A stretch of DNA of 64,000 nucleotides from Lytechinus pictus (Eukaryota): contig NC_087260.1 of NCBI RefSeq assembly GCF_037042905.1, forward strand, positions 24,738,001 to 24,802,000, written 5' to 3'. A program made the translations under genes and the position numbers. Below are positions 41,748 to 64,000 of this stretch, one piece after another. Below the pieces are notes generated by a model that worked only from the letters and a program-made list of their open reading frames with translations, did not search any database and was not told the origin of the DNA. Positions within the stretch are counted from its first letter, which is position 1. Each line of letters begins with the position of its first letter.

Positions 41748-44700
41748 GTAATAACAATAAAAATAAACAGTTTGTATATCACCAATCATAATGCGTCTCT
41801 ATGCCCCTCCAAATGACTTGGATATTATTAACCCGGATTTAGTCTCCAGATTTTTACAACGCACAAGCATTTAATTGATTGATTCCTGCCAGGTACCCAT
41901 TTACCTCACTTGGGTTGAGTGCAGCACGAATGTGGATCTGCAGACCATTATAACTAATTAATTGGTGGACTTCAGTCATTCTTAGGAGTATATGGACTTC
42001 GGTCGTTCTCTACTTATTTGGAGGATGGATAGGACAGCCTCCCCGGGTGGAAGTCCTATACAAGGTGGGGATGGGGGGGGGGGGCACTCGAATTTGGAAA
42101 GGGTAGGGATGTGCGACATCAGAATCTGAAACCATACCCTTGGGAGCCGCAGTTACTGTGAAAACATGGGCTTAAAGACGAGATGGCCCTCTACAAAATA
42201 ATGATCATTTGTCATGATTACCAAAGTGCTTAGAATATCAAAATTTTAGGTCAGATCCAATAGGAAAATTTTCATCTATCGCGCTTCGCTCTTCCATCAA
42301 TAATATTGTTAAGATAGATATTCATCCTGTCAGTGGCGTAGCTAGGATTTTTTTTTCCTGGGTGGGGGGCACTGGGGGTCCTTGCTTTTTTCATGGGGGC
42401 AAGATTTTTTTCTGTGTGTGTATGTGTCACAAGAGCGGATCCGACTTTCGCCAATAGGGGGTGGGGCCTGACATTATCTTCACCTATATTTTCCCCGATC
42501 AGTCACTTCTTAGCTTTATTCTTATAAAACAACATTAATATGAAATAATCTCATAAGCCCTATATAAAAAGTGCGAGCGCAAAGCCCGAGCGATTTTTTT
42601 TTTATCTTACATGTATTTTGTCCTGAAAATTTAAAATTCTGGGCAATGTTTGTGATCCTGAACAAGATGCGTATGTAACTAAATAATTACTGCGAACGCC
42701 AAGCGCGAGCAGAATTTTTTAATAAATGTTCTGACATGATCGGAAAGAAACCTATAAATGACTGTTTACAGCTACTCACGAATACGGTACATATTTCAAA
42801 AATGGGAGCGCGAAAGCACGAGCTAAAACTTTTTGACATCCCGACCCAAAAAAAATTGACATTCTAAGCACTTTTTGTAATCATAAATGGGATAGGTATG
42901 TTACTAAGCAATTGATGCGAGCGCGAAGCGTGAGATTTTAGGCCTAAAAGCGGGACACTCTATTCATAGTTTCTACAAATTATGAATATATGGTTAATTG
43001 GGTATCATCGATAATGCGAGTGTGAAGCGCGAGCAGACAATTATTGATATTCTGATCTGAAACTGGATAATTTAAGTATATTTGAACAAAGAACATACAG
43101 GCTATCTCAAAGGTGCGTGCGCATGTTTTAGATTTAAACCTAGAATCTGGGCATTCTGAATACATTTTTTTAATCATGAAGATCACTAATGCAAGCGAGC
43201 TGAAAACATTTGATATTACGATCTGAAAAACACTATTTCAAGTAGTGTGTAGGAAAATTGTGAATTGGATGTGGATCACACCATGGACCTACTAGCTCCA
43301 TGATCACACTTAATGAATGATGCGAGCGCGAGCTGATATTTTTTTGCCTATTATTTCAACAAAGGACCGGGACATTTTGTCATCCTTATGAAAATGATGA
43401 CTATCTTCCTATTATCCATAAGCTTATCGATATTCCATTCTGAAAAGACCCAATTTACTTATTAGCAATTCATGAAAATTTTATTTTTTATTTGTTAATC
43501 TAATATGCGTAATGACAGCGTGGAAGTTGTTGTTTTTAAGGCTTGAAAACTAGACATCTTAAGCATTTTGTAATTATGAATACGCATTACAATGGTAAAA
43601 TATATTTCAAACAATTAATGCGTGCGCAAATCGCGAGCTGAATTTTTAAAATAAAATGTAATGAAAAGGCCTGGGTTTTTTGTTTGCCTCTAAACAGAAT
43701 TGATATACAGTACTCACCAATCAAAATGCGAGCGTGCAGCGGTAGCTTTAATCTTGATATTTTGAGAAATTTCAGGCGCCTATGGAATACACGAAGACAA
43801 TAGGAACTTGGCAAATCAAATAATGCGATCACGCAGCGTGAGCTTGAAATGTTGATATGTAGACCATATTAACGGACATTTTACAGAGTGCATTTAATTT
43901 GTAAATGGATAAAAAAAATAATGAAGGCTCGATGTCCGAGCTGAAATATGTTTTGTATATTGACTTCAAAACTTGATATTTAAAGCTCCATATCTGCCTA
44001 TTGAGCAAGATACGAATCTCATCGAACATGAACTTCGAGCGCGAAGCGCGAGCGAAAATTTTATTTAGTAACATTTTTTGTTGTTGCAAGACTTCCCCCA
44101 ACATTATTTTATTCGCTCGTCTTCCTCCTCTTATTTCCCTCTTTTTTCATTATGTCTTTCCCCTTCTTTCTCTTTTTCTTTTCTTTTCTTCTTTCTCCCT
44201 TTTTGCTTCGCCAATTTTTTTTTAGAGGGAGGGGGGGCAGCTGGGGGGCACACCAAATCTCAGGGGGCACGTGCCCCCCCCCCGAAGCTACGCCACTGCA
44301 TCCTGTTCATGGTCACAAAAAGTGCTTATATAGAATGTCCAGTTTTTGGTCGAAATATCAAAATTGTTTAGCTCACACTTTAATCGTGCTTGCATTGAAT
44401 GATTAGTTAGACGCCCATCCTGTTCATGAATTGATTACCAATAATGCTCATAATTTCCGAATTTCGGTCAAAATATAAAAAAAAAATTCAGCTCGTGGTT
44501 CTTGCTCGCATCAATATTGTTTAGATAGATACCAATCCAGCTCATGCTTAAAAAAAAAACTGCTCCGAATGTTCAGTTTTCGGGTTTAAGTACATACCCT
44601 AAAATATCTCTCGCTTCGTATTCGCATTATTTTATTTGGGCGCGTCGTGGTATAGTGGTTCTGACTCTCGCCTTTCAAACAGATGATCGTGGGTTCGAAT

Positions 44701-46910: not shown

Positions 46911-47049
46911 GTAAAAAAAAAACTAAATAATTTGTTATTTAATTAATCTTACTGTTTGATAGCGGATACTGATAAGACATTATTTTATTCTAAAACTTCA
47001 CAGTTTGTAGTTATTCATGTAGTTATTAATCAGCACATGATTTATAATA

Positions 47050-47256
47050 TTTTTTCCTTCAGCAAGAAACTGATCCACAATGTGCTGCACTCAACCCAGG
47101 TGAGGTAAATGGGTACCGATAGGAAGTAATTCCTTTAAAAAAATGTGTGTGCTATGAACGCCTAGCTTAGCCGGGTAATATAGGAGCGCTTTGAGGACCT
47201 AACAAGGTGGATATGTGCGCAATATAATACCCGATATTATTATTATTATTATTATT
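47050..47256 (+). mobile_element. 5'-truncated SINE whose (ATT)n tail abuts the retrotransposon stack
   Basis: Same core and 3' end as the SINE at 44638. Confidence 0.85.
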
Positions 47257-50200
47257 TCCATTGTCCACAACTTGATGTTCTGTTAGTATATTAAACAGCA
47301 ACCGGACTTCTTCCAGAAATCTAGGGTTATTGTTCTATATTCTATCAAATGGGTCCTCTTCTCATTGTCACTTCTCTTTCTAATTCAAGACCTTCCGTAA
47401 GATATGAGCTGTTCCAAGCAAGCTTGCCTTCTGTATCGTTTCAAAGGACACCTCGACTCCTAGAACAGCCAGAAAGCTTATGTGTCTTGTTGTCACTGTT
47501 CCTAGGGCTCCGATGACTATTGGTACCACCTTCGTCTTCACCTTCCATTTCCTTCTCAGCTCCCATGCCAGATCGTTATACTTCTGTATCTTTTCCTCCT
47601 CTTTACGCCAAGCTCTGCAGTCTCCCGGAATCGCAATATCTATGATGATACATTCCTTATCCTTCTTCTTCAAGAGAACGATGTCTGGTCGTCTAGCTTC
47701 AATGACCTTGTCTGTCTGGATATTAAAATCCCATAAAAGTTTTACATCGTCGTTCTCTACTACAGGCTCTGCCCGATGTTCGTACCATTTTTCCGCATGG
47801 GGTAAGTGGTACTTCTTGGCCAGACCCCAATGAACTGCAGCTGCTACTCAGTCGTGCCTTCCTTTGTACTCAGTCTGTGCCATTTTGCTGCATTCACTCA
47901 CCAGATGAGACACCGTTTCGTCTTTGTCATGACACATTCTACATGAGGGAGATGTATGCTCCTTTTCAACTTTGGCTCTTCGGTAATTTGTTCTAATTGC
48001 TTGGTCCTGAGCAGCAACTAGCATACTTTCCGTCTCCTTCTTTAAACTTCCTCGTTTCAGCCACTGCCAACTCTCTGGTCCAGCAAACTCCTCTGTCTGT
48101 CTTTGACTGCCGTCATGATGGTATCCATCTGGCCTTCAATATAGCAGTATAGGCTTTGTTCCTCATATCTTACAGTCTCCTCTATTCCAGCCAGACCACG
48201 TCCTCCCTTCTCTCTTGACACATAAAGTCTATCTACATCAGACTTTGGGTGAAACATCCCATGCATAGTTGGCAACTTCCTTGTCTTCCTGTCCAGGGTT
48301 TCGAGTTCAAGCTTGATCCATTTAACTATGCCAGCAGCATATCTCACTAGGGCTACTGCCCAAGTGTTAACAGCCTTCACCATGTTTCCAGCATTTAGTT
48401 TGGATTTGAGCACCTGTCGAATTCTCCTGATATACTCTGTCTCAATCTTCTTCTTCATTTCTTGATGTTTCAACTGATCTGCCTCTAATATTCCGAGATA
48501 TTTATAGCTACCACCGTCTTCGATTGATCTGATCTCTTCTCCGTTCAGCATCTGGAAGTTGTTGTCATTGGCTGGCTTACTTCTCATGAGAGTAATCATT
48601 GCACATTTATCCAACCCAAACTGCATACCGATGTCTTCGCTGAAGATCCGCACAGTGTTGATGAGAGACTCCAAGTCACTTCGTGTCTTACCAAACAGCT
48701 TCAAATCGTCCATGTATAATAGATGGTTGATTTTTGCCTTGCTCTTGAACTCATATCCTAGCCTGGATCTTCCGAGTACCTTAGTTAGTGGTGTCATTGC
48801 TATCACAAACAGCAATGGAGATAGACTATCTCCCTGAAAGATTCATCTCTTGATACCAACCTCTCCAAGTACTTCACCATTACTTTCCAACTTAGTTCTC
48901 CATCTCGTCATACTTGTAATGAGGAACCTTCTGATATTGTCTGCTACCCCTAACATTTCCATAGACTCGATGATCCAAGAGTGCGGAACCATGTCGTATG
49001 CTTTCTTGTAGTCAATTCATGCCATTGCGAGGTTCGTTTTTTCTTTTCTTGCTGTCTTTCATAATTCCTTTGTCGATGCATAGTTGTTCTTTTGTTCCTC
49101 TACTTCCTTTTCTACATCCCTTCTGTTCCCATGGTAGTATGTCTTGATGGTCCAGGTGTTGATATATTTCTTCTGATATTAGGCCAGTCAGTAACTTCCA
49201 GAGAATCGGCAAGCAGGTAATTGGACGGTAGTTTGACGGAATGTTGCCTTTGGTAGGATCCTTTGGGATGAGAACCGTTCTTCCTTTTGTCATCCAATCA
49301 GGGGGGTTACCATTCATGACAATCTCGTTCATCTGCATGCTCAGCCTTTCATGAAGATTTGTGAACCTTTTAACCCAGAAAGCTTGCACACCGTCTGGAC
49401 CGGCAGCTTTCCATGGCGCCATTTTCCGAATGATCTTTTCTAGCTTGCTTTTGTTGATCGTCAGATCATCCTGTGCAACTATAGTTGCACATTCCTCTTT
49501 CGTTGTTTTCAACCACATAGCTTCTTGGTTGTGATTGTGTGGTTGGCTCCAAATGTTGCTCCAGAAGGCAAGTGCTGCAGCTGGATCTGGTGGTGGAACT
49601 TCGTCTTTAATCTTTCCATTTATTTCTTGGTAGAACCTCTTCTGGTTGTTCTCAAACAAGGAATTCTGTCTATACTGTGACACTCGATCGGTGTACCTCT
49701 TTACTTTTGCTGTAGTGCTTGCTATTCTTTGTTTTAGTTCCTCCACGACGATCTTCCTTCCTTTCCTTCTAATACTGTACTTCTCCTCAAGGTACTTAAA
49801 ATCATTGATATCTGCTTTGCCAAGGTTTATCTCTGTCAGTCTTGATAGGTCTGTCCTCCATCCCTTTATCTGATTATCAAGTCTCCTTTTCCATGGTGGT
49901 AGGCAGTGCTTCCTTGTGTTCTCCTGTTTTCTTACACCTAAGCTCTCTGTTACCAGAACTGCTCCAGCATATATGAGATTATTGGTATCCTCAATACTGT
50001 CTGAGCTGATAAACTTCATAACATCGTTGACTTTCTGAGTTTCTATCAGCAGTTTCTCTCTTGGTATTCTCTTCAGATTAGGAGGGGTGGGGCGCTATCC
50101 TTGTGTTAACCCCTCTTTTATCTCCAATAATATCATCTTTATCTCTTCTTGCTCTTCATCCAATCTGTTAGTGGTTGGATCCAATTCTGTTTGAAATTGA

Positions 50201-51101
50201 GCTGTTGCGTCTGTCTGCTCTTCTCTTCCCGGTCTGAGTACTTCCTCCTGCTCATCTCTCACAGGCTCATACACATTTCGTCTGATCCCTTCCCTCTCAA
50301 CTTCAGTCAGTAACTCATTCCTTTTGATCACACGTACCTGATCTGCAAGTATTTGCTCTGATGTTGGGAAAAGACCCTTCTCTTGCCAGATCTTGTACAT
50401 TCTCTTGATGTAGCCTCTTTCCTGGTCAGGTCTGCTCTCATAATAACATTTCATGACATTCATATTGTCTCTTCTGCTCCATTCTCTTCTTGTTGAAGTT
50501 TTTGGTCCAGTAGTAGATTGACGACTGGATCCTGCCTGAGCCTCCACACAATCCATACCGGGCGCGAGCGAACTATGCAGGCTAGTTCTCTCGTTTTCGC
50601 CGTTAACGTTTGTATTCAAATCTGTATTCATCATTTGCATGAGTGATTGTGCCGTATCCCTGGCTCGGGGAAAAGAGTTGGCGTTACCCTGGAACTTTAC
50701 AATTAAAGTGTAAAAAAATTTTGTTCAGCTAGGCCGTTTATCTCCCAAAGTATCTCAGTTCTCCACCATCATAATCGTCTCCTTTCATCGTTCTACGTCA
50801 CTCAAAGTAGCGCGTAACAATGGTTGCCATCAAGCCAGCGTAGTATCATCTACTTGTTATCGTGCGCGCTTCTCGAATAACAACTTTCTATGAAATTTCG
50901 ATAAAAAACATCATGAAACTCACTGATATATGTCCTAATTATTCTCCAAATGCTAATCACGGTACTCCATCGGGTTCCTGGTGTTGTATTGCATCTGCTG
51001 ATATAGATTTCCTTCCAGAAATCGTAAGATAAACAGTAAAATGATGGCAAAATACGGGAGCAACTTTTTAACACGTCCGTTCAGTAAGGATTTGCGCCCT
51101 C
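47257..51101 (-). mobile_element. R4/Dong-clade non-LTR retrotransposon A (degenerate single ORF 50640-47380: N-terminal helical domain, RT, CCHC, restriction-like endonuclease)
   Basis: WKAAGPDG, YRPITCL, FQGDSLSPLLF, YMDD, CRMC..ET..H...C, RHD, RPDI, IDIAIP, KY; in-frame TAG at 50095, other stops and frameshifts; (ATT)n on both sides. The 5' boundary is inferred. Confidence 0.9.
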
Positions 51102-51220
51102 TATTATTATTATTATTATTATTCCTCTAAACAGGATCAAGTCCGTATTTTTTTCTTGAATAACTTTGCTCTAACAAAAAGCACCAAGTAATTTCAAGTG
51201 CAACTAGGAACTTTGCACTA

Positions 51221-54200
51221 CTAATGTCCGAGAGTCTTTCTTATCAATCTGGTTGTACCCAAGATAGCTGCCTTCTGAATGTCGTACATCCGAAGGTGAG
51301 GAGAGATCTTGGTTATGCAGGCTTCCATTCCCTTCTTCACCATTCCTGAGTGACCAATGATGACTGGTGTGACCTCTGCTTTCACGTTCCACATCCTCTC
51401 GATCTCAATCCTTAGGTCTTGATACTTGAGCCGTTTGTCTCTTTCCTTTACAGCAATGTTGATATCATGGGGAACAGAGACCTCAATGATATTTACTACG
51501 TTGTTGTCTCTGACGATGATGTCCGGCTTGTTGCAGTTGATGGTTCTATCCGTTAGTATGCCACAGTTCCAATATATGGTGCTGTTATTGATCGTGGTGA
51601 TCGTTTGTGGCTGATGTTCCCAAGCGTGATCACAAGTCATTTCACCGCGATCCTTCAGTAGTTGCAATTGGATAAGTTTGGCAATATTGTCATGTCTTGT
51701 GATGTACTCAGTTCCAGCAAGAGTCGAACATGCTGATACCAAATGCATGATTGTTTCGGTCTCTTTTCCACACATCCTGCAAGTGTCGTCTGTGTCTGTT
51801 CTGAGGATAGATTTTTCGTAGGCACGGGTCCTCACCACCTGGTCCTGAATAGCATAGACGAACCCTTCAGTTTCACCTCTTAGTCCCGCCGACTTAAGCC
51901 ATTGATGTGTGTCTTTCTGGTCTACAAACTCCCGATGCGTCTGTTTTTCATGGTGGCCATGAAGTCGCTTGGATTTAAGTTGCTCTTGAAGTTTCTTGTG
52001 AAAGGAGCATTTAAGTCTTGCCTTCTCTTTTTCACCGTAGGGTAGTGTCAGTCGATGTTGTGCCAATAAGATAGATGCTTGCTTGTTAATGGAGTATATT
52101 GCTTGACATTTATCATAATCGAGGGATATACTCGTCAGTATATCAGGTGGATTGGATAGGTAGTTGGCGAGGTTCGTTGCTTCCATATTCCAGACCATCT
52201 CAATTTGTTGTAGACCTCTTCCTCCAAGATCACGGGGAAGGTACAACCTTTCGATTGCGGCCTTTGGGTGATGTAATCTGTGCATCGTTAATTGCTTTCT
52301 GGTCATAACATCTAGGCCACATATATCAGCTAGTCTCCAGTTAACAATACCAAAACTGTATCTAAGCACAGGAATGGCTAGAGTGTTGATCGCTTCAATC
52401 TTATTTTTGGCATTCAGTTCGGATTTGAGGATCAGCCTGAGTCTTCTTTTGTATTCTGATGTTGCCTTCTCCTTCATTGTGTTATGGCTAATGACATCGT
52501 TCTCAGCTATGCCTAGATATTTATATGTCGAATCATTAGTCAGTTCCTTGATTGATGTTTCCTCATCTTGCACAAACATGTCGCCTGTATTTACCCTCCG
52601 TCCTCGTACAAGTGTAACTTTGGCACACTTGTCTATACCAAACGACATCTTGATGTCATCGCTGAAATGTTTAACTACTGCTATCATCTTGTGAAGTTCA
52701 TCGTCATTTTTTGCAAAGAGTTTGATATCATCCATATATATCAGATGGTTTATTGTCGTAGATACATCTTGCCCTTTGTATCTGTAGCCATAACTCGTAG
52801 CGTGTAAGAGATAGCATACTGGATTGAGAGCTAAGCAGAATAAAAGAGGAGATAAGGAATCTCCTTGAAATATTCCTCTCTTGATTCGGACCCCCTCCAC
52901 TGTCATCGAACGGGTGCCTATTGTAAGCGAAAGAGTAGTGCTCCATTGTTTCATACCTGCTGATATGCACTTGACTATTTGTGGATTGATGTGATACATC
53001 TCTAGAACTTTGATGATCCAACTATGTGGTACGCTGTCAAATGCCTTCCTGTAGTCTATCCAAGCCATGGATAGATTGGTCTGTCTTTGGCGAGCATTAC
53101 CGATTATTGCTTTGTTTGTCATTAGGTGATCTTTACAACCCTTCTTTCCTTTCCGACAACCTTTCTGAGTGACCTCCATTATGTCATGATCATCGATGTG
53201 TCGTTCGATGTGCATGGCAAGCGTTGATGTCAGCAGCTTATACATAGTATTAAGGCAAGTGATTGGACGATAGTTCTTAGGTTGTTTTGGGTCTTTGCCT
53301 TTGTACAGTAGATATGTCCTTCCAATTGGCAGCCATTTCTCAATAGTCCTGTTCCCTTTGATAATGTCATTGATGATTTTCAGTAGATTGGTATGGGTGC
53401 TACCAAACCTCTTTATCCAGAAGTTTTGTACACCATCTGGTCCAGGGCTTTTCCAGTTCTGAGTGTTCCTTATGATATTGTGTAGTTCAGGTAAGGTCAG
53501 GTCTACTAGCTGCTGCGCTGGCACATTGGACCATTTGTCTGCTTCCGACTGAATCCAGGGAGTTTCTTCGTGAGTGATATCATTATCCCAAAGTTCTTTC
53601 CAGTAGTTCTTCATATCATCTGCCGATGGAACATCTTTCGTCTCAGTCATCTTTGAATCCAGCTCACGAAATAATTTCTTTCTGTTTCCATGGAAGAGTT
53701 TATTCTGCCGTTTGAAATTGTTACTCTTTGTGTATCTCTTAACACGGTGTTTGAGAGCATTTATCTTCATTTTGAGCGTTTCTATAACAGTTGTCCTAGT
53801 ACGGGTCTTATCGTCAATGCGATATTTCTTCTGAAGTCTTTTGGTATTGCTCTTCATCCGATTGGATTTGATGTTTCCCTTATCTACTTCTCCGAGTTGA
53901 GCCACGTCTTTATATAGTTCTGCTATCTTAGTTTGTAGCCTTTTCTTCCATTCAGGAGCCTTCTTCTTATGATTGGTAGAGTGGTTTGATGAATGAAGCT
54001 TGAGTCCCATATGTTCTGTTACAGTTTTTGCTCCTGCCCAGATAAGACAGTTTATCTCCAACAAACTGGAAGGACTAGATTGCACCTTTTCAAGCATTTT
54101 ATCTACTTTGTCGATCACGCTCCTAGTAGTACAGCACCTTGTGTCGATCTTGGGAATTTGTGGTCTATCTGATATTGATATTCCCTTCACATATTCAAAG

Positions 54201-54925
54201 TTGCTCCTCAGTGCTGATAACAGCCGTTGATCGGAATCTCTGTCTTCATTTGTCGAGTCTTGTGATACAATCGCATCTCTCTCGGGTACAGATGATATGA
54301 TATTACCCGATACGTTCCTTTCACATTCGTTATCTTGTTGAATGTGAGGCTCTCCGCCGCATAGAAAATGGGCAACATCGTCCCCATGTTCAGTATCAGT
54401 AATTTCTTGTCTTTTCTTAGCCTTTTCTATTGCTGTAACCCGAAGAGTACGATATTTCACTTTAGGTTGTTGCAAGTGCTGGTGTATGTCTACATGTGAA
54501 GAGAATCCAGTCTTATAGGAGCTGTTTTTTCTTCTGTTCATCGTTGATCCCTTTCCCTCTCCACCAGCGGGCTTGTTGTCAGATGTGTCACAGTACTGAA
54601 AGAAATGTGCACCTCTTTGGTATTCGGCCTCAATCTGTGTGTCTACCGTTTCGATTTCATCTAGTTTTTGTAGAAGAGACAAGGAACACGCCCCAAATTG
54701 AGCGATGTAGTCATCTTTCTTTTTTTTCTTCTGAGCACTGTCCATATCAAGACGATTCATACGTTGTTCTTGTGATATTCTTTGGTTGTGTTCTCCATCT
54801 CGTAAGCCCCTATCACTCTGCGTCCGAACATCCTGTTGATTGTTGAATATAATCCCCTCGTCAAGAAATATATTCACTGTATTTCCAGAAACTGTACTTC
54901 CTTCATCATGGATAGAATTTCTCAC
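51221..54925 (-). CDS. Reverse transcriptase + CCHC + restriction-like endonuclease (1234 aa, uninterrupted; track start is GTG)
   Basis: WKSPGPDG, MAWIDYRKAFDSVPH, QGDSLSPLLF, YMDD, YKYLG, CRMC-H-C, RHD, KPDII, IEVSVP, K..KY. Confidence 0.95.
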   Translation of the reverse strand: MRNSIHDEGSTVSGNTVNIFLDEGIIFNNQQDVRTQSDRGLRDGEHNQRISQEQRMNRLDMDSAQKKKKKDDYIAQFGACSLSLLQKLDEIETVDTQIEAEYQRGAHFFQYCDTSDNKPAGGEGKGSTMNRRKNSSYKTGFSSHVDIHQHLQQPKVKYRTLRVTAIEKAKKRQEITDTEHGDDVAHFLCGGEPHIQQDNECERNVSGNIISSVPERDAIVSQDSTNEDRDSDQRLLSALRSNFEYVKGISISDRPQIPKIDTRCCTTRSVIDKVDKMLEKVQSSPSSLLEINCLIWAGAKTVTEHMGLKLHSSNHSTNHKKKAPEWKKRLQTKIAELYKDVAQLGEVDKGNIKSNRMKSNTKRLQKKYRIDDKTRTRTTVIETLKMKINALKHRVKRYTKSNNFKRQNKLFHGNRKKLFRELDSKMTETKDVPSADDMKNYWKELWDNDITHEETPWIQSEADKWSNVPAQQLVDLTLPELHNIIRNTQNWKSPGPDGVQNFWIKRFGSTHTNLLKIINDIIKGNRTIEKWLPIGRTYLLYKGKDPKQPKNYRPITCLNTMYKLLTSTLAMHIERHIDDHDIMEVTQKGCRKGKKGCKDHLMTNKAIIGNARQRQTNLSMAWIDYRKAFDSVPHSWIIKVLEMYHINPQIVKCISAGMKQWSTTLSLTIGTRSMTVEGVRIKRGIFQGDSLSPLLFCLALNPVCYLLHATSYGYRYKGQDVSTTINHLIYMDDIKLFAKNDDELHKMIAVVKHFSDDIKMSFGIDKCAKVTLVRGRRVNTGDMFVQDEETSIKELTNDSTYKYLGIAENDVISHNTMKEKATSEYKRRLRLILKSELNAKNKIEAINTLAIPVLRYSFGIVNWRLADICGLDVMTRKQLTMHRLHHPKAAIERLYLPRDLGGRGLQQIEMVWNMEATNLANYLSNPPDILTSISLDYDKCQAIYSINKQASILLAQHRLTLPYGEKEKARLKCSFHKKLQEQLKSKRLHGHHEKQTHREFVDQKDTHQWLKSAGLRGETEGFVYAIQDQVVRTRAYEKSILRTDTDDTCRMCGKETETIMHLVSACSTLAGTEYITRHDNIAKLIQLQLLKDRGEMTCDHAWEHQPQTITTINNSTIYWNCGILTDRTINCNKPDIIVRDNNVVNIIEVSVPHDINIAVKERDKRLKYQDLRIEIERMWNVKAEVTPVIIGHSGMVKKGMEACITKISPHLRMYDIQKAAILGTTRLIRKTLGH

Positions 54926-54942
54926 CTTCTCAGTGTTGGTGA

Positions 54943-57900
54943 TTACCGAGTTTTTCCTTTTCCCGATCTCTCTCTATCATTGTTGGTGTCGTGCAATTTG
55001 TCTACTTTATCTGTTATTCGTTTTCCCCTGTCATCTTGATTCTTTGTTGCATTACGCTTTCGTTCTCTACAAAGACTTTGGGCATTTTCCTTTATTCTCT
55101 CTAATTCAATGTCGCTGAAGTATTGAGTACTAATGATACTTTGTTTCATGTCCACTAGACCTTCTTCTCCAACGGATGGGTCACCATTATTTACAAGCCA
55201 CGTTTCTCTCATTCTCTTCCTGTAATATCTAGTTTTATGAGATACATCAGTCGCAAAGTAGAAGCAAGTCATAAGATTTTCCTTCTCTTTATTTGACCAT
55301 AATTTCTTTTCTCCTTTTCTTCTCACTTTGTTGTGTAGTGATTGTGTGTCTAGAATCATCGATGTTCCTACTTTGGCTTCGTCACCATTGGCACTATTGT
55401 AGTCAGAATGGCCATAGATCTCGTAGGCATCATCATCACCGGTATTTTTGTCATCAGCATCATTATGGTCCTCGATGTCATCATCATCGGCTTTTTTGTC
55501 ATCACTATCACCATGGCCATCGTTGGCATCAACAACATCGGCATTATCATCAGGGCCATTATTGGTATCACCAGTGCCGGCATTGTCATGATCACTGTCC
55601 TTAGCATCCCCATGGTCATCGATGGTATCGTCATTACCGGCATTATTGACTTCTCTACAAAGTATGTGTGCCTCTTGCTTTATTCTCTCTAATTCAATCT
55701 CGCTGAAATATTGAGTACGAAGAATACTTTGTTTCATTTCTGCCAGAGCTTGCTCTCCAACGGATGGATCACCATTATTTTTAAGCCACGTTTCTTTCAT
55801 TCTCTTCCTGTAATGTCTAGTTTTATGAGATACATCAGTCGCAAAGTAGAAGCAAGTCATAAGATTTTCCTTCTCTTTATTTGACCATAATTTCTTTTCT
55901 CTTTTCCTCCTCACTTTGCTGTGTAGTGATTGTGTATCAGTGATCTTCGAATTTTCATTATAATTGGCTGGCCATGTCGTATCATTGGCCTTGGGTGGAT
56001 GTCTTGATAATCTCTTGTCACACGTTTCTACTCTCCCGTCTTTATTTGGTTGGCCTCCTTCGTTCCTGCCTTTATGATACACATTCTCACCATCAATATC
56101 GGCATCATAGTCATCATCAGCTGTGTCATTGTTCACAACATCGCCATGGTTATCGTTTATAGCAACATTGTCATTATCTGCTTCATCGTTATTAGCTTCA
56201 GCATGGTCGTCGTTGGCATCATCATTAGGCTTGCCAGCATTATTGACTTCAGCATCACCGAGATCATCATTGGTATCGTCATCACCGGTATCATTGTTGT
56301 CAGCATCATCATGGCCATCGTTGAAATTATCAACACCGACATTATTGTCATCACCATCATGGTTTTCGTTGTCATCTTCATTACCATGGTCGCCGTTGGC
56401 ATCGCCATAGACGGCATTCTTGTCATCAGCATATCTATGGCCATCGTTGGCATTGTCAGCACCGGCATTTTTGTCATCACCATCCCCATGATCGTCGCTG
56501 GTTTCGTCATTACCGGCATTATCGATTTTTCTACAAAGTATATGTGCCTTTTGTTTTATTCTCTCTAATTCAATCTCGCTGAAATATTGAGTACGAAGGA
56601 TACTTTGTTTCATGTCTGCCAGAGCTTGCTCTCCAACGGATGGATCACCATTATTTTTAAGCCACGTTTCTCTCATTCTCTGCCTGTAATGTCTAGTTTT
56701 ATGAGATACATCAGTCGCAAAGTAGAAGCAAGTCATAAGATTTTCCTTCTCTTTATTTGACCATAATTTCTTTTCTCTTTTCCTCCTCACTTTGCTGTGT
56801 AGCGATTGTGTATCTGTGATCTTCGAATTTTCATTATAATTGGCTAGCCATGTCGTATCATTGGCCTTGGGTGGATGTCTTGATAATCTCTTGTCACACG
56901 TTTCTACTCTCCCGTCTTTATTTGGTTGGCCTCCTTCGTTCTTGCCTTTATGATACAAATTCTCACCATCAGTATCGGCATCATCGTCGTCATCAGCTTT
57001 ATGATTTTTCACAACATCGCCATGGTTATCGATTATAGCAACATTGTCATTATCTGCTTCATCGTTATTAGCTTCAGCACGGTCGTCGTTGGCATCGTCT
57101 TTACCAATATTATTGACTTCAGCATCGCCGAGAACATCGTTGGTATCGTCATCACTGGTAATATTGTTGTCAGCATCATCATGGTCATCGTTGGTATCGC
57201 CATCACCGGTATTGTTGTTGTCACCATCACCGAGATCATCATTGGTATCGTCATCACCGGTATCATTGTTGTCAGCATCATCATTGCCATTGTTGAAATC
57301 ATCAACACCGACATTATTGTCATCACCATCATGGTTTTCGTTGTCATCTTCATTATCATGGTCGCCGTTGGCATCGCCATCGCCGGCATTCTTGTCATCA
57401 GCATATCTATGGCCATCGTTTGCATCGTCAGGGCCGGCATTTTTGTCATCACCATCCCCATGATCATCGCTGGTTTCGTCATTACCGGCATTATCGACTT
57501 CTCTACAAAGTATGTGTGCCTTTTGTTTTATTCTCTCTAATTCAATCTCGCTGAAATATTGAGTACGAAGGATACTTTGTTTCATGTCTGCCAGAGCTTG
57601 CTCTCCAACGGATGGATCACCATTATTTTCAAGCCACGTTTCTCTCATTCTCTTCCTGTAATGTCTAGTTTTATGAGATACATCAGTCGCAAAGTAGAAG
57701 CAAGTCATAAGATTTTCCTTCTCTTTATTTGACCATAATTTCCTTTCTCTTTTTCTCTTCACTTTGCTGTGTAGCGATTGAGTATGTAGAATCTTCGACT
57801 TTCCAACTTTTGTTTCATTAACATTGGCATTATTGTCATCAGCCTCTCTATGGTCATCGTAGGCAACATCATCACCGGCGTTCTTGTAATCCGCATCAAT

Positions 57901-58617
57901 ATAAACATCGTTGGCGTCGTCAGGGCCGGCATTTTTGTCATCACCATCCCCATGATCATCTTTGGTTTCGTCATTACCGGCATCATTGTCAACACCATCA
58001 TCGTGGCCATCGTTGATATCTTTATTCCTTGCATTATTGTCATCAGCAACACCATTATCATCGTTGACAGCTTCAGTAAGGTCTACGTTGTCATCATCAT
58101 TATCATTATCATCATCACTTGCACCACCTACTTTCCGGTTCGAAATATTCACTTGGTTCCCTTGCTCAGTAAGATATATTTTAGCTCGCAATTTGATATG
58201 ATGTAATTGTGAGTCCGTGAAATATTTCGAACGGAAGATACTATGTTTCATATCCGCGAGTGCTTGTTCACTGACATTTGGGTCTTCGTTATTCAGAAGC
58301 CATAAATTCCTCATTGACCGTCTATAGTTTCTCGTCTTAGTGGTGTTTAATTTAGTTGCTACATAAAAGCAGAAAATAAGTTCTTCTTTTTCTACTCTCG
58401 ACCACCTTTTCTTTGTCTCTTTATCAGTTCTAGATCTAGTGGTTCTGCATTTGGGCTCATCTTGCGAAATACGGTTTGAAACAGATTCCATTCCTAGTAT
58501 TTCACGCCCGGTTTCTTTCCAATGAGGTATTGATTTTGATTTCCGAGTCCTACAAATGTGATCATTCATAGTTACTTCTTTATAATTGTCACTGGGACTC
58601 TTCTTTCGTGATTCCAT
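54943..58617 (-). CDS. 1224-aa protein with five Dong N-terminal (Myb-like) domains separated by Asp/Asn-rich spacers
   Basis: W(S)xxExxxLxxCFY..YRxxMRxxW..SVxEQALADMK.SI....F unit occurs 5 times and aligns by eye to the single N-terminal domain of element A. Confidence 0.8.
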   Translation of the reverse strand: MESRKKSPSDNYKEVTMNDHICRTRKSKSIPHWKETGREILGMESVSNRISQDEPKCRTTRSRTDKETKKRWSRVEKEELIFCFYVATKLNTTKTRNYRRSMRNLWLLNNEDPNVSEQALADMKHSIFRSKYFTDSQLHHIKLRAKIYLTEQGNQVNISNRKVGGASDDDNDNDDDNVDLTEAVNDDNGVADDNNARNKDINDGHDDGVDNDAGNDETKDDHGDGDDKNAGPDDANDVYIDADYKNAGDDVAYDDHREADDNNANVNETKVGKSKILHTQSLHSKVKRKRERKLWSNKEKENLMTCFYFATDVSHKTRHYRKRMRETWLENNGDPSVGEQALADMKQSILRTQYFSEIELERIKQKAHILCREVDNAGNDETSDDHGDGDDKNAGPDDANDGHRYADDKNAGDGDANGDHDNEDDNENHDGDDNNVGVDDFNNGNDDADNNDTGDDDTNDDLGDGDNNNTGDGDTNDDHDDADNNITSDDDTNDVLGDAEVNNIGKDDANDDRAEANNDEADNDNVAIIDNHGDVVKNHKADDDDDADTDGENLYHKGKNEGGQPNKDGRVETCDKRLSRHPPKANDTTWLANYNENSKITDTQSLHSKVRRKREKKLWSNKEKENLMTCFYFATDVSHKTRHYRQRMRETWLKNNGDPSVGEQALADMKQSILRTQYFSEIELERIKQKAHILCRKIDNAGNDETSDDHGDGDDKNAGADNANDGHRYADDKNAVYGDANGDHGNEDDNENHDGDDNNVGVDNFNDGHDDADNNDTGDDDTNDDLGDAEVNNAGKPNDDANDDHAEANNDEADNDNVAINDNHGDVVNNDTADDDYDADIDGENVYHKGRNEGGQPNKDGRVETCDKRLSRHPPKANDTTWPANYNENSKITDTQSLHSKVRRKREKKLWSNKEKENLMTCFYFATDVSHKTRHYRKRMKETWLKNNGDPSVGEQALAEMKQSILRTQYFSEIELERIKQEAHILCREVNNAGNDDTIDDHGDAKDSDHDNAGTGDTNNGPDDNADVVDANDGHGDSDDKKADDDDIEDHNDADDKNTGDDDAYEIYGHSDYNSANGDEAKVGTSMILDTQSLHNKVRRKGEKKLWSNKEKENLMTCFYFATDVSHKTRYYRKRMRETWLVNNGDPSVGEEGLVDMKQSIISTQYFSDIELERIKENAQSLCRERKRNATKNQDDRGKRITDKVDKLHDTNNDRERSGKGKTR

Positions 58618-58645
58618 ATTTATCTTTTAGTCGATTGGTGGACTC

Positions 58646-58794
58646 NNNNNNNNNNNNNNNNNNNNNNNNNNNNNNNNNNNNNNNNNNNNNNNNNNNNNNN
58701 NNNNNNNNNNNNNNNNNNNNNNNNNNNNNNNNNNNNNNNNNNNNNNNNNNNNNNNNNNNNNNNNNNNNNNNNNNNNNNNNNNNNNNNNNNNNNN
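58646..58794. other. Assembly gap (149 N)
   Basis: Run of N. Confidence 1.
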
Positions 58795-60731
58795 TTCCGT
58801 ATTTTTTTCTTGAATAACTTTGCTCTAACAAAAAGCACCAAGTAATTTCAAGTGCAACTAGGAACTTTACACTACTAATGTCCGAGAGTCTTTCTTATCA
58901 ATCTGGTTGTACCCAAGATAGCTGCCTTCTGAATGTCGTACATCCGAAGGTGAGGAGAGATCTTGGTTATGCAGGCTTCCATTCCCTTCTTCACCATTCC
59001 TGAGTGACCAATGATGACTGGTGTGACCTCTGCTTTCACGTTCCACATTCTCTCGATCTCAATCCTTAGGTCTTGATACTTGAGCCGTTTGTCTCTTTCC
59101 TTTACAGCAATGTTGATATCATGGGGAACAGAGACCTCAATGATATTTACTACGTTGTTGTCTCTGACGATGATGTCCGGCTTGTTGCAGTTGATGGTTC
59201 TATCCGTTAGTATGCCACAGTTCCAATATATGGTGCTGTTATTGATCGTGTTGATCGTTTGTGGCTGATGTTCCCAAGCGTGATCACAAGTCATTTTACC
59301 GCGATCCTTCAGTAGTTGCCAATGGATAAGTTTGGCAATATTGTCATGTCTTGTGATGTACTCAGTTCCAGCAAGAGTCGAACATGCTGATACCAAATGC
59401 ATGATTGTTTCGGTCTCTTTTCCACACATCCTGCAAGTGTCGTCTGTGTCTGTTCTGAGGATAGATTTTTCGTAGGCACGGGTCCTCACCACCTGGTCCT
59501 GAATAGCATAGACGAACCCTTCAGTTTCACCTCTTAGTCCCGCCGACTTAAGCCATTGATGTGTGTCTTTCTGGTCTACGAACTCCCGATGCGTCTGTTT
59601 TTCATGGTGGCCATGAAGTCGCTTGGATTTAAGTTGCTCTTGAAGTTTCTTGTGAAAGGAGCATTTAAGTCTTGCCTTCTCTTTTTCACCGTAGGGTAGT
59701 GTCAGTCGATGTTGTGCCAATAAGATAGATGCTTGCTTGTTAATGGAGTATATTGCTTGACATTTATCATAATCGAGGGATATACTCGTCAGTATATCAG
59801 GTGGATTGGATAGGTAGTTGGCGAGGTTCGTTGCTTCCATATTCCAGACCATCTCAATTTGTTGTAGACCTCTTCCTCCAAGATCACGGGGAAGGTACAA
59901 CCTTTCGATTGCGGCCTTTGGGTGATGTAATCTGTGCATCGTTAATTGCTTTCTGGTCATAACATCTAGGCCACATATATCAGCTAGTCTCCAGTTAACA
60001 ATACCAAAACTGTATCTAAGCACAGGAATGGCTAGAGTGTTGATCGCTTCAATCTTATTTTTGGCATTCAGTTCGGATTTGAGGATCAGCCTGAGTCTTC
60101 TTTTGTATTCTGATGTTGCCTTCTCCTTCATTGTGTTATGGCTAATGACATCATTCTCAGCTATGCCTAGGTATTTATATGTCGAATCATTAGTCAGTTC
60201 CTTGATTGATGTTTCCTCATCTTGCACAAACATGTCGCCTGTATTTACCCTCCTTCCTCGTACAAGTGTAACTTTGGCACACTTGTCTATACCAAACGAC
60301 ATCTTGATGTCATCGCTGAAATGTTTAACTACTGCTATCATCTTGTGAAGTTCATTGTCATTTTTTGCAAAGAGTTTGATATCATCCATATATATCAGAT
60401 GGTTTATTGTCGTAGATACATCTTGCCCTTTGTATCTGTAGCCATAACTCGTAGCGTGTAAGAGAGAGCATACTGGATTGAGAGCTAAGCAGAATAAAAG
60501 AGGAGATAAGGAATCTCCTTGAAATATTCCTCTCTTGATTCGGACCCCCTCCACTATCATCGAACGGGTGCCTATCGTAAGCGAAAGAGTAGTGCTCCAT
60601 TGTTTCATGCCTGCTGATATGCACTTGACTATTTGTGGATTGATGTGATACATCTCTAGAACTTTGATGATCCAACTATGTGGTACGCTGTCAAATGCCT
60701 TCCTGTAGTCTATCCAAGCCATGGATAGATT
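58795..60731 (-). mobile_element. 5'-truncated copy C of the element B family (ORF 58875-60722)
   Basis: Near-identical to B positions 51144-53077; ends in (ATT)n at 60729-60761. Confidence 0.95.
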
Positions 60732-60761
60732 ATTATTATTATTATTATTATTATTATCATT

Positions 60762-62714
60762 CCTCTAAACAGGATCAAGTCCGTATTTTTTCTTGAATAA
60801 CTTTGCTCTAACAAAAAGCACCAAGTAATTTCAAGTGCAACTAGGAACTTTACACTACTAATGTCCGAGAGTCTTTCTTATCAATCTGGTTGTACCCAAG
60901 ATAGCTGCCTTCTGAATGTCGTACATCCGAAGGTGAGGAGAGATCTTGGTTATGCAGGCTTCCATTCCCTTCTTCACCATTCCTGAGTGACCAATGATGA
61001 CTGGTGTGACCTCTGCTTTCACGTTCCACATTCTCTCGATCTCAATCCTTAGGTCTTGATACTTGAGCCGTTTGTCTCTTTCCTTTACAGCAATGTTGAT
61101 ATCATGGGGAACAGAGACCTCAATGATATTTACTACGTTGTTGTCTCTGACGATGATGTCCGGCTTGTTGCAGTTGATGGTTCTATCCGTTAGTATGCCA
61201 CAGTTCCAATATATGGTGCTGTTATTGATCGTGTTGATCGTTTGTGGCTGATGTTCCCAAGCGTGATCACAAGTCATTTTACCGCGATCCTTCAGTAGTT
61301 GCCAATGGATAAGTTTGGCAATATTGTCATGTCTTGTGATGTACTCAGTTCCAGCAAGAGTCGAACATGCTGATACCAAATGCATGATTGTTTCGGTCTC
61401 TTTTCCACACATCCTGCAAGTGTCGTCTGTGTCTGTTCTGAGGATAGATTTTTCGTAGGCACGGGTCCTCACCACCTGGTCCTGAATAGCATAGACGAAC
61501 CCTTCAGTTTCACCTCTTAGTCCCGCCGACTTAAGCCATTGATGTGTGTCTTTCTGGTCTACGAACTCCCGATGCGTCTGTTTTTCATGGTGGCCATGAA
61601 GTCGCTTGGATTTAAGTTGCTCTTGAAGTTTCTTGTGAAAGGAGCATTTAAGTCTTGCCTTCTCTTTTTCACCGTAGGGTAGTGTCAGTCGATGTTGTGC
61701 CAATAAGATAGATGCTTGCTTGTTAATGGAGTATATTGCTTGACATTTATCATAATCGAGGGATATACTCGTCAGTATATCAGGTGGATTGGATAGGTAG
61801 TTGGCGAGGTTCGTTGCTTCCATATTCCAGACCATCTCAATTTGTTGTAGACCTCTTCCTCCAAGATCACGGGGAAGGTACAACCTTTCGATTGCGGCCT
61901 TTGGGTGATGTAATCTGTGCATCGTTAATTGCTTTCTGGTCATAACATCTAGGCCACATATATCAGCTAGTCTCCAGTTAACAATACCAAAACTGTATCT
62001 AAGCACAGGAATGGCTAGAGTGTTGATCGCTTCAATCTTATTTTTGGCATTCAGTTCGGATTTGAGGATCAGCCTGAGTCTTCTTTTGTATTCTGATGTT
62101 GCCTTCTCCTTCATTGTGTTATGGCTAATGACATCATTCTCAGCTATGCCTAGGTATTTATATGTCGAATCATTAGTCAGTTCCTTGATTGATGTTTCCT
62201 CATCTTGCACAAACATGTCGCCTGTATTTACCCTCCTTCCTCGTACAAGTGTAACTTTGGCACACTTGTCTATACCAAACGACATCTTGATGTCATCGCT
62301 GAAATGTTTAACTACTGCTATCATCTTGTGAAGTTCATTGTCATTTTTTGCAAAGAGTTTGATATCATCCATATATATCAGATGGTTTATTGTCGTAGAT
62401 ACATCTTGCCCTTTGTATCTGTAGCCATAACTCGTAGCGTGTAAGAGAGAGCATACTGGATTGAGAGCTAAGCAGAATAAAAGAGGAGATAAGGAATCTC
62501 CTTGAAATATTCCTCTCTTGATTCGGACCCCCTCCACTATCATCGAACGGGTGCCTATCGTAAGCGAAAGAGTAGTGCTCCATTGTTTCATGCCTGCTGA
62601 TATGCACTTGACTATTTGTGGATTGATGTGATACATCTCTAGAACTTTGATGATCCAACTATGTGGTACGCTGTCAAATGCCTTCCTGTAGTCTATCCAA
62701 GCCATGGATAGATT
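60762..62714 (-). mobile_element. 5'-truncated copy D, apparently identical to C (period 1983 bp)
   Basis: Same protein, same truncation point, same interrupted (ATT)n tract. Confidence 0.95.
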
Positions 62715-62744
62715 ATTATTATTATTATTATTATTATTATCATT

Positions 62745-64000
62745 CCTCTAAACAGGATCAAGTCCGTATTTTTTCTTGAATAACTTTGCTCTAACAAAAA
62801 GCACCAAGTAATTTCAAGTGCAACTAGGAACTTTACACTACTAATGTCCGAGAGTCTTTCTTATCAATCTGGTTGTACCCAAGATAGCTGCCTTCTGAAT
62901 GTCGTACATCCGAAAGTGAGGAGAGATCTTGGTTATGCAGGCTTCCATTCCCTTCTTCACCATTCCTGAGTGACCAATGATGACTGGTGTGACCTCTGCT
63001 TTCACGTTCCACATCCTCTCGATCTCAATCCTTAGGTCTTGATACTTGAGCCGTTTGTCTCTTTCCTTTACAGCAATGTTGATATCATGGGGAACAGAGA
63101 CCTCAATGATATTTACTACGTTGTTGTCTCTGACGATGATGTCCGGCTTGTTGCAGTTGATGGTTCTATCCGTTAGTATGCCACAGTTCCAATATATGGT
63201 GCTGTTATTGATCGTGGTGATCGTTTGTGGCTGATGTTCCCAAGCGTGATCACAAGTCATTTTACCGCGATCCTTCAGTAGTTGCCAATGGATAAGTTTG
63301 GCAATATTGTCATGTCTTGTGATGTACTCAGTTCCAGCAAGAGTCGAACATGCTGATACCAAATGCATGATTGTTTCGGTCTCTTTTCCACACATCCTGC
63401 AAGTGTCGTCTGTGTCTGTTCTGAGGATAGATTTTTCGTAGGCACGGGTCCTCACCACCTGGTCCTGAATAGCATAGACGAACCCTTCAGTTTCACCTCT
63501 TAGTCCCGCCGACTTAAGCCATTGATGTGTGTCTTTCTGGTCTAAAAACTCCCGATGCGTCTGTTTTTCATGGTGGCCATGAAGTCGCTTGGATTTAAGT
63601 TGCTCTTGAAGTTTCTTGTGAAAGGAGCATTTAAGTCTTGCCTTCTCTTTTTCACCGTAGGGTAGTGTCAGTCGATGTTGTGCCAATAAGATAGATGCTT
63701 GCTTGTTAATGGAGTATATTGCTTGACATTTATCATAATCGAGGGATATACTCGTCAGTATATCAGGTGGATTGGATAGGTAGTTGGCGAGGTTCGTTGC
63801 TTCCATATTCCAGACCATCTCAATTTGTTGTAGACCTCTTCCTCCAAGATCACGGGGAAGGTACAACCTTTCGATTGCGGCCTTTGGGTGATGTAATCTG
63901 TGCATCGTTAATTGCTTTCTGGTCATAACATCTAGGCCACATATATCAGCTAGTCTCCAGTTAACAATACCAAAACTGTATCTAAGCACAGGAATGGCTA
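62745..64000 (-). mobile_element. Copy E of the element B family, runs off the window
   Basis: Same 3' UTR and RLE; private substitutions EFLDQ and PHFR. Confidence 0.95.

What the first reader, a model, noticed from the sequence alone, without database searches (positions are those of the whole stretch)
47234..64000. Head-to-tail stack of at least five RLE retrotransposons from two families in one SINE (ATT)n tail
Seen: all copies are on the - strand, and each visible 3' end abuts an (ATT)n tract (47234-47256, 51103-51123, 60729-60761, 62712-62744); the 3' end of C is hidden by the gap. The stack starts in a SINE tail, antisense within an intron. Other (ATT)n tracts in the window (7140, 28273, 41474, 41680) are unoccupied. 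Knowledge: Dong elements target (TAA)n. Inference: each insertion leaves target repeats at its 5' flank, making a self-renewing landing pad; decayed family A came first and young family B later. The L2/SINE system appears to supply targets to an unrelated site-specific element.
Basis: partly seen in the sequence, partly recalled or inferred. Interest (0 to 1): 0.7.

Follow-up and report, generated by a model that had tools for sequence, protein, structure and literature searches.

The report
Dong-type retrotransposon pile-up in TAA repeat
One short TAA repeat at the end of a sea-urchin SINE was hit three or four times by TAA-seeking Dong-type jumping genes and then lengthened by local tandem duplication, which is a clear example of a known kind of element and not a new mechanism.

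Summary
On the minus strand lie a defective family-A element (47257-51101), a full-length family-B element (51124-58645), an assembly gap, and 5'-truncated B copies C, D and E. A sixth copy F lies just past the window. Every visible 3' end abuts an (ATT)n tract. The pile is bracketed by a SINE tail on the left and (ATT)17 plus unique DNA on the right. Both families encode a reverse transcriptase, a CCHC knuckle and an R2-like restriction-like endonuclease (RLE). The best named relative is a louse element, from a species whose elements a published survey files under R4/Dong. Across the genome, 24 of 28 readable 5' junctions also abut TAA repeats, so TAA is a true target and not only a self-made tail. 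Of 80 listed 3' ends, 25 have a same-strand neighbour within 10 kb. The reading needs one correction. C, D and E share one truncation junction found nowhere else in the genome, C equals D, and the variant pattern is mosaic. They are therefore tandem duplicates (probably unequal crossing-over or conversion), not separate insertions. Independent insertions number three or four. The gap separates two copies, and no reading frame crosses it. Copy number next to the gap is unverified. The scan reached the same reading before on another stretch of this genome (s1-317567). The finding is ordinary: a new member of a known kind.

The parts
47053..47233 (+). 5'-truncated copy of a tRNA-derived SINE whose (ATT)n tail is the left edge of the target microsatellite
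   Evidence: The genome search gives at least 1778 candidates at 95-96% identity. Other copies extend 5' into a tRNA-like GGTTCGAATCC box and end in (ATT)2-8.
47234..47256 (.). (ATT)7 tract: SINE tail on the + strand, which is the (AAT)n tail and target remnant of element A on the - strand
   Evidence: TRF; sequence read.
47257..51101 (-). Family A Dong-like element, probably full length but defective
   Evidence: Pfam RT on a fragment. tblastn against B ORF2 gives 34-43% identity in three pieces across two frames, with internal stops. The copy has a 105-bp deletion relative to other copies. Its 5' region is shared with about 6-10 other partial or full copies, two of which match to the same end. 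The family has at least 169 3'-end candidates at 97-99% identity.
51102..51123 (.). (ATT)7 tract between the A 5' end and the B1 3' end
   Evidence: TRF; sequence read.
51124..58645 (-). Family B Dong-like element B1, full length up to the gap, with two long open frames
   Evidence: ORFs. The 3' end is 99-100% identical to at least 153 candidates. The 5' region is present in only about four copies in the genome.
51221..54925 (-). B1 ORF2: reverse transcriptase, CCHC zinc knuckle and restriction-like endonuclease
   Evidence: Pfam RVT_1, E 7e-29. The best solved relatives are R2 proteins, E 4e-26. CCHC, RHD, PD and K columns are invariant in alignment A1. The model of the last 243 aa (pLDDT 82) matches R2 proteins only at the top, E 1.7e-8, TMq 0.62-0.70.
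54943..58617 (-). B1 ORF1: five copies of the N-terminal helical domain that family A carries once
   Evidence: BLASTP of the A N-terminal ORF against this ORF gives five hits, E 1e-10 to 2e-5. The same domain is found in the louse homologue.
58646..58794 (.). Assembly gap between the B1 5' leader and the 3' end of copy C
   Evidence: Sequence read. An in-frame stop lies upstream of the ORF1 ATG. The hidden letters were not sought.
58795..60728 (-). Copy C: 5'-truncated B (3' part, about 1950 bases), identical to D apart from a homopolymer length and one base at the gap edge
   Evidence: Alignment.
60729..60761 (.). (ATT)9-ATC-ATT tract between C and D
60762..62711 (-). Copy D: same truncation junction as C and E
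   Evidence: The 28-base junction pattern occurs three times in the genome, all in this array.
62712..62744 (.). (ATT)9-ATC-ATT tract between D and E, identical to the C-D tract
62745..64000 (-). Copy E, which continues to 64694 outside the window. Beyond it lie a tract at 64695-64721, copy F at 64722-66581 with a different truncation point, (ATT)17 at 66582-66632, then unique DNA
   Evidence: L031 read. E matches C and D at the truncation point and one variant, and matches F at the remaining variants.

Best explanation
The region began as one short (TAA)n/(ATT)n microsatellite: the tail of a 5'-truncated tRNA-derived SINE. Two families of RLE-bearing non-LTR retrotransposons, best filed as R4/Dong-like, recognise this repeat. 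They nick the (TTA)n strand and start target-primed reverse transcription from it. Every copy therefore lies antisense to the SINE, ends in (AAT)n, and is usually 5'-truncated at an AAT microhomology. Because the element lands inside the repeat, TAA units remain on both sides and can be hit again.

The older family A landed first, next to the SINE. A full-length family-B element (B1) landed in the repeats upstream of A. One or two 5'-truncated B copies of another B subfamily landed upstream of that. The unit 'truncated B plus TAA tract' (1983 bases) was then multiplied locally by unequal crossing-over or gene conversion, giving C, D and E.

Shown here: the anatomy, the protein domains, the TAA flanks on both sides genome-wide, the clustering, the locus-unique junction and the mosaic variants. 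Inferred: which strand is nicked, the order of events, and crossing-over as the duplication mechanism.
For: Protein identity:
- RT domain.
- Invariant CCHC, RHD, PD and K motifs.
- R2-like fold of the C-terminal module.
- Best named homologue is a 1168-aa multicopy louse RT, 39% identity, E 3e-215, against E 1e-24 or weaker for R2-named and other more distant hits. Louse elements are among the R4/Dong set of PMC7998251.

Targeting:
- All sampled B 3' ends abut (ATT)n.
- 24 of 28 readable 5' junctions abut TAA repeats.
- This pile ends in (ATT)17 followed by unique DNA.
- Published Dong elements target (TAA)n (PMC3812793; PMC7998251).

Stacking:
- 25 of 80 listed 3' ends have a neighbour within 10 kb, always on the same strand, against 0.2% expected.
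- Other stacks have different truncation points (L005/L006, L024/L030, L037, L038), and mixed A/B stacks also occur (L003, L009, L010, L048-L051).

Separate events in this pile:
- A and B are different families.
- B1 and copies C-F differ at five sites that are polymorphic across the family, which indicates two subfamilies.

Duplication:
- The C/D/E junction is unique to this locus.
- C and D are identical.
- C and D share three derived bases. E and F share one. C, D and E share one plus the junction.
- D, E and F all carry the same ATC variant in the tail next to the 3' end.
- A second array, on contig 3, repeats a compound A unit with a 2518-2522 base period at 98.7-99.97% identity.
Against: - No read evidence. 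The public runs found hold under a fifth of the flank's words, are short contigs, and do not bridge the junctions. The array's copy number is therefore unverified, and C sits at a gap edge.
- The simple D x F crossover model predicts that E carries F's tail length. E instead carries D's tail (11 units against 9), so conversion or later slippage must be added.
- F's different truncation can be read either as a separate insertion or as a later deletion.
- Placement in the R4 clade rather than HERO rests on a best hit and on the target, not on a phylogeny.
- No HDV-like ribozyme was found at the A 5' end, although Dong of Bombyx has one (PMC3774820).
- Four of the 28 5' junctions lack TAA repeats.
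Confidence: 0.72

Rival explanations
1. One reading: every copy (A, B1, C, D, E, and F) is a separate retrotransposition into the repeats left by the previous one.
For: Serial insertion does happen elsewhere. The stacks in L005/L006, L024/L030, L037 and L038 have different truncation points at each copy. The truncation sites carry AAT microhomology, which could bias where copies end.
Against: Three copies end at exactly the same base, and that 28-base junction exists nowhere else among at least 153 B copies. C and D are identical over 1934 bases, including the tract length. Derived substitutions are shared between neighbours.
Confidence: 0.05
2. One-step concatemer. During a single target-primed reverse transcription, the enzyme repeatedly slipped from an internal AAU of the RNA back to its (UAA)n tail. 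This wrote several identical truncated units at once, and the last pass ended at another AAU and joined the upstream TAA repeats (copy F).
For: Both truncation points sit on AAT microhomology with the tail. D, E and F share the same tail variant. All four copies belong to one B subfamily. Regular-period arrays recur on contig 3.
Against: Units written in one event from one RNA should differ only by private errors. Here three derived bases are shared by C and D only, and one by E and F only. That still requires later duplication or conversion, so the extra mechanism explains nothing more. In the contig 3 array the repeated unit is compound (two copies of different length), which fits crossover better.
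Confidence: 0.08
3. Part of the array is an assembly artefact. The identical C and D units beside the gap are one unit written twice, or more units collapsed, by the assembler or scaffolder.
For: C and D are identical, C abuts the gap, and the bases at the gap edge differ from all other copies. No reads could be laid that span the units.
Against: E and F each have private and shared variants and distinct tract lengths, so at least F-E-D is carried by distinguishable sequence. A comparable array exists elsewhere without a gap. This rival changes the copy number only, not the nature of the locus.
Confidence: 0.15

Closest known systems
Dong (Bombyx mori) and Dong-like elements of the R4 clade (DongAg, DongBg, Darwinula Dong1/2)
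   Same: RT followed by a CCHC knuckle and an RLE. No AP endonuclease. Insertion into (TAA)n in one orientation. An N-terminal helical domain without zinc fingers. Frequent 5' truncation (PMC3812793, PMC7998251).
   Different: The host is a sea urchin. Family B carries the N-terminal domain five times, and as assembled it has two reading frames instead of one. No 5' HDV-like ribozyme was detected at the one complete 5' end I could read. Clade placement was not tested by phylogeny.
R2 (28S rDNA-specific RLE retrotransposon; solved structures 8GH6, 9DOU, 9NL2)
   Same: The same RT and C-terminal zinc-knuckle and RLE fold, so presumably the same target-primed reverse transcription chemistry.
   Different: The target is a microsatellite, not the 28S gene. 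There are no N-terminal zinc fingers. Sequence similarity is only about E 1e-26, against E 1e-215 to the Dong-like louse element.
HERO clade RLE elements (some families microsatellite-specific)
   Same: RLE architecture and a microsatellite target; the clade is mostly non-specific with some microsatellite-specific families (PMC4640811). My recollection that HERO elements occur in sea urchins was not checked in any paper here.
   Different: No HERO reference sequence was available, so membership could be neither shown nor excluded. The best named relative instead comes from a species listed in the R4/Dong set.
Arrays of tail- or repeat-targeting non-LTR elements (telomeric TRAS/SART and HeT-A/TART arrays, Zepp of Chlorella inserting into earlier copies' tails); from my own knowledge, not checked in papers here
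   Same: Head-to-tail piles arise because each copy recreates the sequence that the next copy targets.
   Different: Here the seed is an interstitial SINE tail, two unrelated-at-DNA-level families share the pad, and a good part of the length comes from later tandem duplication.

Membership tests
RLE-type non-LTR retrotransposon (R2 group) | Reverse transcriptase domain of the non-LTR type | tested here: met
   Pfam RVT_1, E 7e-29 for B and 5e-7 on an A fragment. The best solved relatives are R2 proteins.
RLE-type non-LTR retrotransposon (R2 group) | C-terminal CCHC knuckle plus PD-(D/E)xK restriction-like endonuclease, and no AP endonuclease | tested here: met
   C, C, H, C, RHD, PD and K are invariant in 9 sequences. 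The model (pLDDT 82) has its top seven matches all in R2 proteins, E 1.7e-8 to 1.9e-5, followed by other PD-(D/E)xK nucleases. No Exo_endo_phos match.
RLE-type non-LTR retrotransposon (R2 group) | Footprints of target-primed reverse transcription: fixed 3' end and variable 5' truncation | tested here: met
   All copies share the 3' terminus. The 5' ends fall at many positions. One copy has a 13-base target duplication (L062).
R4/Dong clade | Insertion specifically into (TAA)n, with repeats on both flanks | tested here: met
   24 of 28 readable 5' junctions and all sampled 3' ends abut TAA repeats. This pile is bracketed by (ATT)7 and (ATT)17.
R4/Dong clade | RT phylogeny groups the element with R4 and Dong and not with R2, NeSL, CRE or HERO | not testable with these tools
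   No named R4, Dong or HERO reference sequences could be obtained. Indirect evidence: the best named hit is a Pediculus RT (39% identity, E 3e-215), and Pediculus is a species in the R4/Dong alignment of PMC7998251. I could not confirm that it is the same accession.
R4/Dong clade | Divergent Myb/SANT-like N-terminal domain without zinc fingers (PMC7998251) | tested here: inconclusive
   A homologous N-terminal domain is shared by A, B (five copies) and the louse element. The model is a four-helix domain (pLDDT 80) with only weak matches to the Sap1 DNA-binding domain and TRF Myb domains, E 0.5 or worse. No Pfam match.
R4/Dong clade | HDV-like self-cleaving ribozyme at the element's 5' end (shown for Dong and R4, PMC3774820) | tested here: inconclusive
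   No Rfam match at E up to 1 over 46900-58645. My simple nested-helix descriptor found none in the first 260 bases of A. Both methods are weak for pseudoknotted ribozymes. B1's true 5' end is hidden by the gap.
R4/Dong clade | Single open reading frame | tested here: inconclusive
   B1 has two long open frames in different phases that meet at 54925-54943. A is too damaged to tell.
Tandem repeat made by unequal exchange | Units with identical boundaries, a junction unique to the locus, and variants shared between neighbours in a mosaic | tested here: met
   Period of 1983 bases. The junction occurs three times in the genome, all here. C equals D. The four-gamete pattern fails between alignment columns 910 and 2101.

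The most novel reading that the evidence does not exclude
The regular-period arrays (1983 bases here, about 2520 bases on contig 3) are written in a single retrotransposition event. The reverse transcriptase slips from an internal AAU back onto the (UAA)n tail, so Dong-type elements would directly seed satellite-like tandem repeats from SINE tails, with no need for later recombination.
Probability: 0.08. Interest if true: 0.6.

Novelty: new member of a known kind. Interest (0 to 1): 0.3.

Why it matters
The locus is a well-resolved example of how a target-specific retrotransposon and a SINE interact. SINE tails supply TAA microsatellites, and Dong-type elements land in them in one fixed orientation. 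Each landing leaves repeats on both sides, so about a third of sampled copies sit in same-strand clusters. Ordinary unequal exchange can then turn a cluster into a kilobase-period tandem repeat. This is useful for annotating sea-urchin (Lytechinus) repeats and as a caution for assemblies, because a gap falls inside the array. It adds no new mechanism, and the same conclusion was already reached in this scan for another locus of the same genome.

Tried and rejected
I could not read the flanks of the louse and metagenome homologues to check their own TAA targeting.
The 5' junctions of the other full-length A and B copies could not be read, and no unbiased genome-wide map was made. The sample is the best-scoring 40 hits per query.
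- The sequencing-run search found only runs holding under 0.2 of the flank's words, all kept as short contigs. Laid on L031:600-6000, they gave multicopy noise over the element and no contig bridging the (ATT)17 junction. There is therefore no verdict on the array or on an empty allele. I did not lay reads over the gap.
- Rfam found nothing relevant at E up to 1, and a hand-made HDV-like descriptor found nothing.
- Pfam found nothing for the N-terminal domain or for the putative upstream exon.
- Element tails are only marginally longer than SINE tails (median 6.5 against 6 pure units, one-sided p 0.046). I therefore do not claim that insertion lengthens the landing pad.
- I could not obtain Xiong and Eickbush 1993, which is not held.
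- I built no consensus and no repaired frame.
Full report
**What is there**

I read 46800-64000 directly and fetched the next 10 kb (L031). The window is contig 16, 24,738,001-24,802,000, of an 812-Mb genome.

On the minus strand, from left to right:
- A 5'-truncated SINE on the + strand, 47053-47233.
- (ATT)7.
- Element A, 47257-51101.
- (ATT)7.
- Element B1, 51124-58645.
- The assembly gap, 58646-58794.
- Copy C, 58795-60728.
- A 33-base ATT tract.
- Copy D, 60762-62711.
- The same 33-base tract again.
- Copy E, 62745-64694.
- A 27-base tract.
- Copy F, 64722-66581.
- (ATT)17.
- Unique AT-rich DNA.

The pile is one copy longer than the window shows, about 19.4 kb in all.

**The gap**

Left of the gap is B1's 5' leader. 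The ORF1 ATG is at 58617 and an in-frame TAA lies 12 nt upstream of it. Right of the gap is the 3' untranslated end of copy C, short of its terminus by about 17 bases. No frame crosses the gap, and the two sides are different copies. Whether further units are hidden cannot be known. I did not look the letters up or lay reads over the gap.

**What the elements are**

B1 has two long open frames.

ORF2 (51221-54925):
- It carries a Pfam reverse transcriptase, E 7e-29.
- Among solved structures it is closest to R2 proteins, E 4e-26.
- Its last 243 residues contain C-x2-C-x8-H-x4-C, RHD, PD and a lysine. All are invariant in an alignment with eight homologues.
- An AlphaFold model of that part (pLDDT 82) has its seven best PDB matches all in R2 retrotransposon proteins (E 1.7e-8 to 1.9e-5, TMq 0.62-0.70). 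Other PD-(D/E)xK nucleases follow.
- The RLE label is therefore tested and met.

Relatives:
- The best named relative is a 1168-residue, multicopy reverse transcriptase of Pediculus humanus (39% identity, E 3e-215). R2-named hits reach only E 1e-24.
- Pediculus is one of the species in the R4/Dong alignment of PMC7998251. I could not confirm that it is the same accession.

Family A:
- It is related to B only at protein level (34-43% identity, no nucleotide match).
- It carries once the N-terminal helical domain that B's ORF1 carries five times. The louse element also has this domain.
- This A copy is defective: three pieces in two frames, internal stops and a 105-bp deletion relative to other copies.
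- It reaches the family's 5' end.

**Is TAA a target or only a tail?**

- Family B has at least 153 candidate 3' ends and family A at least 169.
- All sampled B 3' ends abut (ATT)n, which alone proves nothing.
- The 5' junctions decide it. Among 28 distinct 5'-truncated copies whose junction lies inside the fetched loci, 24 abut TAA repeats on the 5' side as well. The four exceptions are L017, L028, L054 and L059.
- One copy at the edge of a tract shows a 13-base target duplication (L062).
- In this locus the outermost copy F is followed by (ATT)17 and then unique DNA, so the whole pile sits inside one repeat.
- This matches published Dong behaviour: TAA microsatellites in silkworm, mosquito, snail, ostracod and cnidarians (PMC3812793; PMC7998251).

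**The SINE**

- The left flank is a 5'-truncated member of a tRNA-derived family with at least 1778 candidates and tails of two to eight ATT units.
- Elements always lie antisense to it. This is expected because the SINE's sense tail is (ATT)n and the elements' sense tail is (AAT)n.
- About a third of the sampled B loci sit tail-to-tail with a SINE-like 3' end.
- At least three of the four unoccupied tracts elsewhere in the window are also SINE tails.
- I did not test whether the SINE's LINE partner is an L2.

**Stacking**

- Of 80 listed A and B 3' ends, 25 have another within 10 kb. The neighbour is always on the same strand. Random placement predicts 0.2%.
- Other stacks show a different truncation point at each copy (L005/L006, L024/L030, L037, L038).
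- Mixed A/B stacks occur in both orders (L003, L009, L010, L048-L051).
- Repeated insertion into repeats left beside earlier copies is therefore real.
- I do not claim that insertion lengthens the pad. Element tails are barely longer than SINE tails.

**The correction**

C, D and E are not separate insertions.
- They share one truncation junction. The 28-base junction pattern occurs three times in the genome, all here.
- C equals D over 1934 bases apart from a homopolymer length and one base at the gap edge.
- Each B copy in this pile was compared, at the sites where those copies differ, with the commonest base among 22 other B copies, which gives this pattern:
  - C and D share three derived bases.
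  - E and F share one.
  - C, D and E share one, plus the junction.
  - This fails the four-gamete test.
- D, E and F also share an ATC variant in the tail.
- The simplest account is a 1983-base unit (truncated B plus tract) multiplied by unequal exchange or conversion.
- F, with its own truncation point, is either a fourth insertion or a trimmed unit.
- B1 belongs to the other B subfamily at five polymorphic sites, so it is a separate event.
- Independent insertions therefore number three or four.
- A second array on contig 3 repeats a compound A unit every 2518-2522 bases at 98.7-99.97% identity. Amplification after stacking is therefore recurrent.

**Weak points**

- No reads verify the array, and C touches a gap.
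- The simple crossover model mispredicts E's tail length.
- R4 against HERO was not settled by a tree.
- No 5' ribozyme was found, although Bombyx Dong has one (PMC3774820).
- 'Intron, antisense' is only plausible.

**Verdict**

The locus is a Dong-type pile-up in a SINE-tail microsatellite, enlarged by tandem duplication. It is a new member of a known kind. An earlier follow-up in this scan reached the same reading for another 12-kb array in this genome (s1-317567).

Noticed in passing
window 54943-58617 (-): B1's first open frame holds five copies of a roughly 100-residue helical domain separated by acidic, repeat-rich linkers. Family A has the same domain once (50095-50640). The model has four helices, with only weak likeness to the Sap1 and TRF Myb DNA-binding domains.
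   Followed up: partly
window 54925-54943 (-): The two long open frames of B1 are in different phases and nearly touch. I did not test whether this is a programmed frameshift, a termination-reinitiation site, or a single mutation.
   Followed up: no
G000 contig 3, 77,816,176-77,827,684 (L051-L053, L064): A full-length family-A copy is followed by at least three compound units (an 89-base mini-copy plus an A copy truncated at position 1593) with a 2518-2522 base period at 98.7-99.97% identity. A truncated B copy follows the last unit.
   Followed up: partly
G000 contig 6, about 9.79-9.89 Mb (L014-L017, L048-L050): A and B copies with identical flanks recur every 30-35 kb. This looks like a large segmental tandem duplication that carries a mixed A/B stack.
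   Followed up: no
L062 (G000 contig 9, near 22,520,031): A family-A copy at the edge of a TAA tract is flanked by the same 13 bases (AGAGTATCAATAT) on both sides. This is a visible target-site duplication that suggests staggered cuts about 13 bases apart.
   Followed up: no
L017 (G000 contig 6, near 9,794,901): One B copy is joined at its 5' end to a run of about 21 A residues instead of TAA repeats. Its three segmental duplicates run to the edge of the fetched loci at that position, so their 5' ends could not be compared.
   Followed up: no
window 7040-7165, 8442-8506, 41892-41938, 44717-44892: Further copies or fragments of the same tRNA-derived SINE family lie here. The copy at 7040-7138 keeps an unoccupied (TAT)8 tail.
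   Followed up: partly
L031:2953-5124 (window-equivalent 66953-69124): Several stretches of the right flank attract very deep contig coverage in all four public runs, so they are high-copy repeats of unknown kind.
   Followed up: no
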